A program made the translations under genes and the position numbers. From Octopus sinensis (Eukaryota), in the NCBI RefSeq assembly GCF_006345805.1, contig NW_021826976.1, positions 1-11,447 on the forward strand: DNA of 11,447 nt, written 5' to 3'. This document shows positions 9,251-9,767 of this stretch, piece by piece (within the stretch, counting starts at the first letter, position 1; every line of letters starts with the position of its first letter). The notes under the pieces were generated by a model that worked only from the letters and a program-made list of their open reading frames with translations, did not search any database and was not told the DNA's origin.

Positions 9251-9259
<9 letters not shown>

Positions 9260-9762
9260 AGTGTACATTTAAACACAAATGGGGTGACCCTAACAGGACA
9301 CCTTACATGCTAGAAGGAACAGTCAATGTCCAAACCACGGTTAAGAGCAATTTCGAAGGGAATGAAAAAAATTTACCTCCCGGACCTAGGTTTCGAAATT
9401 TCGAACTTTAATTAAAATAAAACAATTCGTTAGGCGAAGTTCTCATCAGCGGGAGAGGCAAAAATTTACATATAATTATGAGACAAAATAGCACATGTCT
9501 TATCTTTATATTATAATTTTTCAAATCCACCGCAAAAGTGCAGTTTTAGTCGGCAGCAAATAAAAATGTCGGCTTACTTTAAAATTACTAAATTGCTCTT
9601 AACCGTGGTTTGGACTTTGACTGTTCCTTCTAGCATGTAAGGTGTCCTATTAGTTTCACCTCTTTTGTGTGTAAATGTACACCAATTTTATATGACAAAA
9701 ATGTTGTCTATCGACTATATTATGCATGCTAGTCACTGGTAGAAAAAATTCTCTAACTTTTC

Positions 9763-9767
<5 letters not shown>
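9251..9767. mobile_element. Long-inverted-repeat (MITE/foldback-like) element, copy 1, carrying a hammerhead
   Basis: Arms 9251-9353 and 9590-9692 are reverse complements at 94/103 positions, around a 236-bp spacer. The right arm extends to ..ctacct|TA at 9767, as shown by homology with 11073-11154. The outer part of the left arm is missing. Confidence 0.88.
9377..9455 (-). ncRNA. Type I hammerhead ribozyme, catalytic core intact
   Basis: Minus strand CUCCCG (stem I, 9455-9450) - CUGAUGA (9449-9443) - GAACUU (9442-9437) - 28-nt loop - AAGUUC (9408-9403) - GAAA - uuuc - GAAA - CCUAG-GUC (palindrome ACCUAGGU; predicted cleavage between 9383 and 9382) - CGGGAG (stem I, 9382-9377). Stems I and II are perfect 6-bp helices abutting the conserved core. 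Confidence 0.85.

What the first reader, a model, noticed from the sequence alone, without database searches (positions are those of the whole stretch)
9251..9767. Candidate new system: a long-TIR, MITE-like element that encodes a self-cleaving ribozyme
Seen: ~180-bp terminal inverted arms (103 bp paired here at 94/103), termini ..CTACC(C/T)|TA, no ORF, and a hammerhead in the 236-bp spacer, in two independent copies. Established: eukaryotic hammerheads are typically found in the direct or pLTR repeats of Penelope-like elements and retrozymes, whereas TIR/TA-flanked MITEs move as DNA and need no ribozyme. Inference: (a) a foldback non-autonomous retroelement mobilised by a PLE RT; (b) a DNA transposon that captured a ribozyme, which cuts read-through RNA in the hairpin loop and separates the arms; or (c) an integrated rod-like, viroid/retrozyme-like RNA. 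I found no second ribozyme in the opposite polarity. I am not aware of a described element with this layout, but could not search.
Basis: partly seen in the sequence, partly recalled or inferred. Interest (0 to 1): 0.85.

Follow-up and report, generated by a model that had tools for sequence, protein, structure and literature searches.

The report
Hammerhead-bearing Penelope-type retroelement remnants
The "ribozyme-carrying MITE" is most likely two decayed copies of a short retroelement of the Penelope-like kind, one with the head-to-head inverted partner these elements often form, so it is a fairly ordinary member of a known class and not a new system.

Summary
The inverted arms are real: 9250-9353 against 9590-9693, 94/103 matches. 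A type I hammerhead lies on the minus strand of the 236-bp spacer (9455->9377, cut after C9383). It scores 31.3 bits against Rfam RF00163, just under the family threshold of 34. The "two copies" claim holds only in part. Copy 2 (10757-11154) has one arm, and its hammerhead is destroyed. No copy has two complete ~180-bp arms.

Both outer ends of copy 1 are the same 3' end (CTACCY) pointing outward. Copy 2 begins where copy 1's inner unit begins. This is the published architecture of Penelope-like element (PLE) insertions: a hammerhead near the 3' end, an adjacent inverted 5'-truncated copy, and a (TA)n target.

The (TA)n flanks are pieces of one microsatellite inside an old SINE. That microsatellite also took up a further SINE and an unknown block, so the flanks are not a TA target-site duplication.

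No RT, endonuclease or transposase remnant is in the window, and no other family copies could be reached in any collection, so the PLE link rests on architecture and the literature. Verdict: a new member of a known kind, low interest, confidence about 0.6.

The parts
9251..9353 (-). Copy 1: 3' arm of the hammerhead-sense unit. Its outer 75-81 bp are missing; it breaks off at an internal TATAT next to (TA)n.
   Evidence: It is 91% identical to the inverted partner and 86% to the copy 2 arm.
9354..9376 (-). Copy 1: linker between the hammerhead and the arm.
9377..9455 (-). Copy 1: type I hammerhead motif. Helix I is 9455-9450 paired with 9382-9377. CUGAUGA is 9449-9443. Helix II is GAACUU (9442-9437) with AAGUUC (9408-9403). 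The GAAA boxes are at 9402-9399 and 9394-9391. Helix III with its palindromic loop, ACCUAGGU, is 9391-9384. The predicted cut is after C9383.
   Evidence: RF00163 at 31.3 bits (gathering score 34), E 1.3e-6; HH9 at 18.4 bits; descriptor hit in 2 of 1000 shuffles; constrained folds.
9390..9405 (-). 8-nt tandem duplication, UUCGAAAU|UUCGAAAC, between helix II and the GAAAC box. It is absent from copy 2.
   Evidence: and direct reading.
9456..9589 (-). Copy 1: 5' part of the unit, starting AGUAAUUUU at 9589.
   Evidence: 87% identical to 10757-10835 of copy 2.
9590..9767 (+). Copy 1: inverted 5'-truncated partner. It is 178 bp of the unit's 3' end pointing the other way, with terminus CTACCT at 9767.
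   Evidence: Terminal stem-loop GGUAGAAAA/UUUUCUACC.
10757..11154 (+). Copy 2: a single unit with no inverted partner. Its 5' end is at the same position as the unit start in copy 1, and its terminus CTACCC is at 11154.
10836..10931 (+). Copy 2: decayed hammerhead. CAGAAGAG is at 10842-10849, a T-rich expansion follows, GAAUUC replaces GAAAC, and GUC|CGGGAGG is kept at 10922-10931.
   Evidence: No Rfam hammerhead hit.
10971..11154 (+). Copy 2: full 184-bp 3' arm.
9231..9254 (.). (TA)n to the left of copy 1. It is the internal microsatellite of the flanking minus-strand SINE.
9768..9793 (.). (TA)13 abutting the CTACCT terminus.
11155..11229 (.). (TA)n abutting the CTACCC terminus of copy 2. It continues into the internal microsatellite of the other half of the split SINE.

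Best explanation
These are two old, dead insertions of one short, non-coding retroelement family of the Penelope-like (PLE) kind.

The unit and the two copies:
- The unit is about 400-415 bp. Read 5' to 3' it is AGUAAUUUU..., about 190 nt, a type I hammerhead, about 210-230 nt, a terminal GGUAG...CUACC stem-loop, and the end CUACCY.
- It is either a non-autonomous derivative of a PLE pseudo-LTR or a heavily 5'-truncated PLE 3' end.
- Copy 2 is a plain unit.
- Copy 1 is a unit on the minus strand with a second, 178-bp 5'-truncated copy of the same 3' end joined head-to-head to its 5' end. Both outer termini are therefore 3' ends facing the (TA)n target, and this produces the apparent long 'TIRs'.

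Inferred mechanism:
- A PLE RT/GIY-YIG protein supplied in trans nicks both strands of AT-rich or (TA)n DNA.
- It primes reverse transcription of the element RNA from both nicks.
- The two cDNAs are joined at a short TTT/AAA microhomology.

The hammerhead:
- It is a relic of the PLE terminal region. It has the metazoan form that needs to dimerise (a 2-bp helix III with a palindromic CUAG loop).
- It would process multimeric or read-through PLE RNA in the source copies.
- In these two genomic copies it is under no selection. It is dead in copy 2. In copy 1 it is intact in its core but carries an 8-nt duplication.

What is shown and what is inferred:
- Shown here: the anatomy, the orientation of the ends, the hammerhead motif, its decay in copy 2, and the (TA)n nest.
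- Inferred: mobilisation by a PLE enzyme, priming from both strands, and any ribozyme activity.
For: 1. The hammerhead is a full-length, near-threshold match to Rfam type I (31.3 bits against 34). Its features are those Cervera & de la Pena describe for metazoan hammerheads: a 6-bp helix I, a G10.1-C11.1 pair, and a 1-2-bp helix III capped by a 2-4-nt palindromic loop, so that it works as a dimer (PMC4209133). As a monomer the hammerhead fold is 8-9 kcal/mol worse than the minimum free energy (MFE) fold, but the palindrome ACCUAGGU gives a -12.8 kcal/mol intermolecular helix III.
2. [quoted passage not shown] The hammerhead lies in the terminal repeat near the 3' end, and (TA)n or other microsatellites are preferred targets (PMC8557442). 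A purified PLE protein nicks and extends both DNA strands at AT-rich sites, and the hammerhead is dispensable for insertion (PMC11167929).
3. In copy 1 the inverted arm contains the element's true 3' terminus, so both 3' ends face outward. LINE-type twin priming would instead give non-overlapping segments.
4. Copy 2 has the same 3' terminus and the same 5' start but no partner arm. The arm is therefore optional for each insertion, not part of the element.
5. Copy 1's two arms are closer to each other (91%) than to copy 2 (82-86%), as expected if they were made in a single event.
6. The same (TA)n tract took up undoubted retroposons.
7. Cervera & de la Pena report that most such motifs are single, dispersed and 'probably related to truncated PLEs', and that some pairs lie 100-700 bp apart on opposite strands. 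A 2026 preprint derives animal hammerhead repeats from PLE pseudo-LTRs.
Against: - No RT or GIY-YIG coding remnant is in the window.
- No partner element or further family copy could be retrieved from any collection, so the PLE link rests on layout and the literature, not on sequence.
- There is no direct partial-tandem repeat (pseudo-LTR) at either copy.
- The two copies share a 5' end, which random 5' truncation does not predict. It fits a discrete non-autonomous unit better.
- The main unit of copy 1 lacks its last 75-81 bp, which target-primed insertion does not normally produce. This needs a later deletion, or priming at the internal TATAT.
- The hammerhead is the 'canonical' type linked mostly to tandem retrozyme repeats, not the minimal variant typical of full PLEs (PMC7229834).
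- The Rfam score is below the family threshold.
- Only two copies were available.
Confidence: 0.6

Rival explanations
1. This is a true foldback or long-TIR non-autonomous DNA transposon (MITE-like) whose internal region captured, or descends from, a hammerhead-bearing sequence. It moves as DNA by a transposase that recognises the CTACCY termini and duplicates TA.
For: Copy 1 has 104-bp arms at 91%. Both full arms end in the same CTACCY next to TA. There is no ORF. The terminal 30 nt contain a small inverted repeat, GGTAG...CTACC.
Against: - No copy has two complete termini. Copy 1's left arm lacks 75-81 bp, and copy 2 lacks an arm entirely, starting exactly at the arm/spacer junction.
- The TA flanks are fragments of one SINE-internal microsatellite that also holds retroposon insertions, so they are not a duplication.
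- No transposase remnant is present.
- A DNA transposon has no use for a ribozyme.
Confidence: 0.1
2. These are relics of an animal non-LTR retrozyme: a tandem hammerhead repeat expressed as small circular RNA and copied back into DNA. They survive here as isolated monomers, one of them rearranged.
For: The hammerhead is a canonical type I with a 6-bp helix I and a palindromic loop 3. The unit is about 400 bp with 32-34% GC, within the 170-400-nt, below-45%-GC range reported for such repeats, including a mollusc (PMC7229834). Such repeats are now thought to derive from PLE pseudo-LTRs, so this rival overlaps with the best explanation.
Against: - There is no head-to-tail tandem. Each copy has a single hammerhead, so no monomer can be excised.
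- Both copies share the same fixed 5' and 3' ends instead of circularly permuted ends.
- An inverted rather than a direct partner is present.
Confidence: 0.1
3. The hammerhead-like motif is fortuitous. The element is an unclassified repeat with a local inverted duplication that arose at the DNA level.
For: The Rfam score is below the gathering threshold (31.3 against 34). The whole-window scan did not report it. The fold of the motif region is no better than shuffles (z = -0.79). Copy 2 lacks the motif. The motif was found by a reader who was looking for such things.
Against: - The match covers the whole model, with all core boxes, a GUC cut site, a 6/6 Watson-Crick helix I and a palindromic loop 3. 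E is 1.3e-6 for the 93 nt searched, about 1.6e-4 when I rescale to the whole window.
- Only 0.2% of shuffled windows give any descriptor hit.
- Copy 2 keeps recognisable remains at the homologous positions (CAGAAGAG, stem II AACUUCG, GUC|CGGGAGG). This fits decay from an ancestral hammerhead.
- Animal genomes hold thousands of such motifs.
Confidence: 0.1

Closest known systems
Penelope-like element insertions with an adjacent inverted 5'-truncated copy (Evgen'ev & Arkhipova 2005; Craig et al. 2021, PMC8557442)
   Same: The hammerhead lies in the terminal region near the 3' end. The insertion is head-to-head, with both 3' ends facing outward, which gives the inverted repeats. The target is a (TA)n microsatellite, the partner is optional for each insertion, and there is no poly(A) tail.
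   Different: No RT/GIY-YIG ORF and no direct pseudo-LTR are present here. The unit is only about 400 bp and appears to have a fixed 5' end. The link to a PLE enzyme has not been shown.
Hammerhead ribozymes of metazoan PLEs and dispersed 'truncated PLE' motifs (Cervera & de la Pena 2014, PMC4209133)
   Same: It is type I with a weak helix III and a palindromic loop, which implies dimeric action. The G10.1-C11.1 pair is present. Most genomic instances are single, dispersed and variable.
   Different: Helix I is 6 bp and loop 2 is very long (29-44 nt), unlike the minimal variants. Copy 1 has an 8-nt duplication next to the GAAA box.
Animal non-LTR retrozymes (Cervera & de la Pena 2020, PMC7229834; Li et al. 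2026 preprint)
   Same: It is non-coding, low in GC and a few hundred bp long, with a canonical type I hammerhead, and it is probably PLE-dependent.
   Different: Those are head-to-tail tandem arrays that yield circular RNAs. Here the units are single, have fixed ends and, in one case, an inverted partner.
Foldback elements and long-TIR MITEs
   Same: Copy 1 looks like a hairpin-forming, ORF-less element of about 0.5 kb between TA-rich flanks.
   Different: The termini are not symmetrical in either copy, no target-site duplication is visible, a ribozyme of retroelement type is present, and the second copy has only one arm.

Membership tests
Hammerhead ribozyme, type I (Rfam RF00163) | Conserved core: CUGANGA box, GAAA box and an NUH cleavage triplet. 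| tested here: met
   Copy 1, minus strand: CUGAUGA at 9449-9443, GAAA at 9394-9391 (and at 9402-9399), GUC at 9385-9383. Copy 2 does not meet this: it has CAGAAGA and GAAUUC.
Hammerhead ribozyme, type I (Rfam RF00163) | Three helices around the core, with helix I open (type I topology). | tested here: met
   Helix I is 6 Watson-Crick pairs. Helix II is a 6-bp GAACUU/AAGUUC stem, or GAA/UUC plus UUCG/CGAA in the other register. Helix III is AC/GU with a CUAG loop. The 8-nt duplication makes the helix II register ambiguous.
Hammerhead ribozyme, type I (Rfam RF00163) | Score at or above the curated gathering threshold. | tested here: not met
   31.3 bits against 34. The shortfall comes from the 44-nt insertion in loop 2.
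Hammerhead ribozyme, type I (Rfam RF00163) | Self-cleavage at the predicted site. | not testable with these tools
   This needs in vitro transcription of monomeric and dimeric constructs.
Penelope-like element (insertion or derivative) | RT plus GIY-YIG ORF in the element, or in a partner that shares its termini. | tested here: inconclusive
   None is in the window. The source genome could not be reached.
Penelope-like element (insertion or derivative) | Pseudo-LTR, meaning a direct partial-tandem repeat. | tested here: not met
   There is no direct repeat of the unit at either copy.
Penelope-like element (insertion or derivative) | Inverted 5'-truncated copy adjacent to the 5' end, with both 3' ends outward. 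| tested here: met
   Copy 1: the 178-bp partner at 9590-9767 is joined to the unit's 5' end at 9589. It is absent in copy 2, which the published descriptions allow.
Penelope-like element (insertion or derivative) | Hammerhead motif in the terminal region near the 3' end. | tested here: met
   The cut site is 230 nt from the 3' end in copy 2's coordinates and about 210 nt in copy 1.
Penelope-like element (insertion or derivative) | Insertion bias for AT-rich or (TA)n microsatellite DNA. | tested here: met
   All three intact 3' termini abut (TA)n. SINEs in the same tract show that the bias is not specific to PLEs.
Penelope-like element (insertion or derivative) | Optional 30-40-bp 'tail' at one end. 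| not tested
   Two copies are too few to define a tail.
MITE / foldback DNA transposon | Matching inverted repeats at both termini of each copy. | tested here: not met
   Copy 1's left end lacks the terminal 75-81 bp. Copy 2 has a single arm.
MITE / foldback DNA transposon | Target-site duplication of fixed length. | tested here: inconclusive
   The flanks are (TA)n on all sides and belong to one split microsatellite.
Animal non-LTR retrozyme | Head-to-tail tandem repeats, each with a hammerhead. | tested here: not met
   There is no tandem, and there is one motif per copy.
Animal non-LTR retrozyme | Unit of about 170-400 nt, low GC, canonical type I hammerhead. | tested here: met
   The unit is 398 bp (copy 2) at 32-34% GC. 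See for the hammerhead.
Animal non-LTR retrozyme | Circular RNA intermediates. | not testable with these tools
   No RNA data are available.

The most novel reading that the evidence does not exclude
The family's active master could itself be a hairpin element with both ~180-bp arms and a hammerhead in the loop. It would be a dispersed, non-tandem, PLE-dependent 'foldback retrozyme'. Ribozyme cleavage in the loop would separate the arms of read-through hairpin RNA, for instance to escape or feed small-RNA pathways. On this reading, copy 2 and the short arm of copy 1 are secondary truncations.
Probability: 0.08. Interest if true: 0.6.

Novelty: new member of a known kind. Interest (0 to 1): 0.2.

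Why it matters
If the PLE reading is right, the locus is a clean small example of three things. First, PLE-type integration produces hairpin-forming inverted repeats that mimic long-TIR DNA transposons. This is a practical warning for repeat annotation and for MITE finders. Second, hammerhead motifs decay once they are separated from the source copy. Third, a single (TA)n tract inside a SINE acted as a repeated landing site for several retroelements. It opens no new question about ribozymes or transposition. A transcript that reads through the 104-bp near-perfect hairpin could be a substrate for small-RNA production, but that is speculation.

Tried and rejected
Searches for further family copies, a partner element or the source genome all failed:
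- A profile of three arm translations against 5.8 billion proteins: 0 hits.
- The arm pattern AAATTGCTCTTAACCGTNNTTTGGAC in metagenome, viral and prokaryotic genome contigs: 0 hits.
- Hammerhead patterns with a variable loop in metagenome and viral contigs: 0 hits.
- A SINE pattern in genome and viral contigs: 0 hits.
- A SINE-derived 116-aa ORF against the protein collection: 0 hits.
- Exact look-up of the ten longest window ORFs: none is in the collection.
- Full-text search for SINE sequence strings: 0 hits.
- Supplementary files of the two key PLE papers are not held.
- A literature search for hammerheads in MITEs or TIR elements gave nothing relevant.

Other points:
- The host organism remains unidentified. 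From memory the tRNA-type SINE resembles cephalopod (octopus) repeats, but that is an unverified lead.
- ARAGORN finds no tRNA in the SINE heads.
- The many Rfam miRNA hits are microsatellite and SINE-hairpin artefacts, all far below threshold.
- A pol III SINE reading was rejected because the hammerhead-sense strand has 8-11 runs of four or more T.
- LINE-type twin priming was rejected because the inverted segment contains the 3' terminus itself.
- A single composite 1.9-kb element spanning both copies was considered. I rejected it because the two units differ by about 15% and by large indels, whereas copy 1's own arms differ by 9%.
- The third protein search was not spent on host identification.

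Full report
1. THE OBSERVATION

The window is AT-rich (38% GC) and full of (TA)n, (CA)n and (ATT)n runs and SINE copies.

The reported inverted repeat is real. Arms 9250-9353 and 9590-9693 pair over 104 nt at 91%, with 94 matches, 9 mismatches and 1 gap. They are separated by a 236-bp spacer. An RNA of 9251-9767 would fold into a long hairpin at -216 kcal/mol, against -105 +/- 7 for shuffles.

The right arm continues to 9767 (178 bp). It is homologous over its whole length to a 184-bp segment of a second copy at 10971-11154. There is no ORF of note, and no Pfam family matches any stop-free stretch of 40 aa or more in the window.

2. THE HAMMERHEAD

The motif lies on the minus strand of copy 1, 9455->9377:

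CUCCCG CUGAUGA GAACUU-(loop)-AAGUUC GAAAUUUC GAAAC CUAG GUC|CGGGAG

- The whole-window Rfam scan did not list it, and a 541-nt scan gave only a weak HH9 hit of 18.4 bits.
- A scan of the 93-nt motif gives a full-length match (model positions 1-45) to Hammerhead_1, the type I family RF00163. The score is 31.3 bits against a gathering score of 34, and E = 1.3e-6 for that search. By my own rescaling this is about 1.6e-4 for the whole window. The lost bits come from a 44-nt insertion in loop 2.
- A simple descriptor of my own finds this one site in the window. Only 2 of 1000 dinucleotide shuffles give any hit.
- The motif has a 6-bp helix I, a G10.1-C11.1 pair, a GUC cut site, and a helix III of two pairs capped by the palindromic loop CUAG. 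This is the form Cervera & de la Pena describe for metazoan type I hammerheads, which act as dimers (PMC4209133).
- Consistently, the monomeric hammerhead fold is 8-9 kcal/mol worse than the MFE fold, while the palindrome ACCUAGGU gives a -12.8 kcal/mol intermolecular helix.
- Copy 1 carries an 8-nt tandem duplication (UUCGAAAU|UUCGAAAC, 9405-9390) between helix II and GAAAC. It is absent from copy 2. Without it, helix II (GAACUU/AAGUUC) would abut the GAAA box as in a textbook hammerhead. With it, two alternative registers remain possible.

3. THE SECOND COPY DOES NOT SUPPORT 'TWO COPIES WITH A HAMMERHEAD'

Copy 2 (10757-11154, plus strand in the hammerhead sense) aligns with copy 1 as follows:
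- the first 77 nt of the unit: 87%
- the inner arm: 86%
- the whole arm: 82%

In the hammerhead segment it has:
- a 46-57-nt gap that removes the 5' strand of helix I
- CAGAAGAG in place of CUGAUGAG
- a T-rich expansion in loop 2
- GAAUUC in place of GAAAC

Identity over all columns falls to 55% in that segment, and Rfam finds no hammerhead there even at E <= 10. Recognisable remains (AACUUCG, AAGUUCGAA, GUC|CGGGAGG) show decay from a common ancestor.

Copy 2 also has only one arm. Upstream of 10757 lies a full tRNA-type SINE (10323 to about 10740) plus 17 AT-rich bp. Copy 2 starts at the very position (AGTAATTTT) where, in copy 1, the spacer meets the inverted arm.

4. ANATOMY RE-READ

Read in the hammerhead sense, the repeated unit U has these parts in order:
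- a 5' start AGUAAUUUU
- about 190 nt
- the hammerhead
- 23-41 nt of linker
- a ~180-nt 'arm'
- a terminal GGUAG...CUACC stem-loop
- the end CUACCY

Copy 2 is U. Copy 1 is U on the minus strand (9589->9251) plus a 178-bp inverted copy of U's own 3' end (9590-9767) joined to U's 5' end. The join is at a TTT/AAA overlap.

Both outer ends of copy 1 are therefore 3' ends pointing outward. The 'TIR' length is simply the length of the truncated partner.

The main unit of copy 1 lacks its last 75-81 bp. The break is at an internal TATAT that runs straight into (TA)n. This suggests a later microsatellite-mediated deletion, or priming on that internal site.

Copy 1's two arms are more alike (91%) than either is to copy 2 (82-86%), as expected if they were made in one event.

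5. THE FLANKS

The (TA)n flanks are not a TA duplication. An old minus-strand SINE is split exactly at its internal (TA)n. Its 3' part is 9027-9252 (SINE positions 168-399) and its 5' part is 11199-11375 (positions 1-192).

Everything between lies inside that microsatellite as separate blocks bounded by (TA)n:
- copy 1
- (TA)13
- an unknown 497-bp block (9794-10290)
- (TA)16
- a full SINE followed by copy 2
- (TA)n

So this tract repeatedly received retroposons. TA-rich flanks here say 'retroelement landing site', not 'DNA transposon'.

6. COMPARISON WITH WHAT IS KNOWN

- Craig et al. (PMC8557442) describe PLE insertions as highly 5'-truncated and often in partial tandems (pseudo-LTRs). [quoted passage not shown] Hammerheads lie in the terminal repeats near the 3' end, and (TA)n or other microsatellites are preferred targets.
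- Frangieh et al. (PMC11167929) show that a purified PLE protein nicks and extends both DNA strands at AT-rich sites. They also show that the hammerhead is not needed for insertion. This gives a mechanism for head-to-head copies and explains why sequence upstream of the cut site is present in genomic copies.
- Cervera & de la Pena found that most such motifs are single and dispersed, 'probably related to truncated PLEs', with some pairs 100-700 bp apart on opposite strands. That is what a longer inverted partner would give here.
- Animal tandem hammerhead repeats (non-LTR retrozymes; PMC7229834) share the canonical type I motif, unit size and low GC. A 2026 preprint argues they derive from PLE pseudo-LTRs.

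7. WHAT IS NOT SHOWN

I could not reach the source genome or any other family member, and the window has no RT, endonuclease or transposase remnant. The PLE assignment therefore rests on architecture, hammerhead type and the literature. Three observations do not fit a plain truncated PLE:
- The absence of a direct pseudo-LTR.
- The shared 5' end of the two units, which points to a discrete non-autonomous unit rather than random truncation.
- The canonical rather than minimal hammerhead.

Each of the three fits a PLE-derived non-autonomous element. A pol III SINE reading is unlikely because the sense strand has 8-11 runs of four or more T. LINE-type twin priming is excluded because the inverted segment includes the 3' terminus.

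8. VERDICT

- The 'new MITE-like ribozyme system' is not supported.
- The best reading is two decayed insertions of a hammerhead-bearing, PLE-type short retroelement, one with the usual inverted partner (confidence about 0.6).
- Novelty: a new member of a known kind.
- Interest: low (0.2).
- The residual novel reading is a true hairpin-shaped, PLE-dependent element with a loop ribozyme. I give it about 8%.

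Noticed in passing
window 9027-9252 and 11199-11375 (minus strand): These are two halves of one old tRNA-type SINE, split at its internal (TA)n microsatellite by about 1.95 kb of nested insertions: both hammerhead-element copies, an unknown block and a younger SINE. The tract was a repeated landing site.
   Followed up: yes
window 6609-6790 (+): A 5S rRNA-like head (6609-6727, 90 bits to RF00001) is fused directly to the 3' tail module of the tRNA-type SINE (6726-6790, 95% identical to SINE positions 350-414). 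This looks like a 5S-derived SINE that shares its tail with the tRNA-derived family.
   Followed up: partly
window 8604-8976 (+) and 9027-9252 (-): Two SINE 3' ends face each other across (TA)n at 8966-9019, forming a hairpin. This hairpin produces the spurious Rfam MIR4208 and MIR2646 hits. The other miRNA hits in the window are microsatellite artefacts far below threshold.
   Followed up: partly
window 3150-5400: A cluster of five to eight partial copies of a second repeat family (units spaced 186-223 bp, 60-87% alike, core ...CGCCGAGGTCGACTTTGCCTTTCATCCTTTCGGGGTCGAT...). It is probably another SINE family or a short tandem array.
   Followed up: no
window 9794-10290: A 497-bp block with no repeat, ORF, Pfam or Rfam match, bounded on both sides by pure (TA)n (9768-9793 and 10291-10322). 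It may be another inserted element of unknown type.
   Followed up: no
window 9738-9766 and 11125-11153: Both full arms end in a small terminal stem-loop closed by GGUAG/CUACC: 9 bp at -9.1 kcal/mol in copy 1, weaker at -4.8 in copy 2. It could be a recognition or initiation site for the reverse transcriptase.
   Followed up: partly
window 9390-9405 (-): An 8-nt tandem duplication, UUCGAAAU|UUCGAAAC, lies inside the copy 1 hammerhead. It creates two alternative registers for helix II and the GAAA box. Copy 2 has a single unit.
   Followed up: yes
window 5428-5500 and 6048-6280: Long (ATT)n/(GTT)n/(ATC)n trinucleotide tracts produce the longest 'ORFs' of the window (for example 6016-6309). They are not coding.
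   Followed up: no
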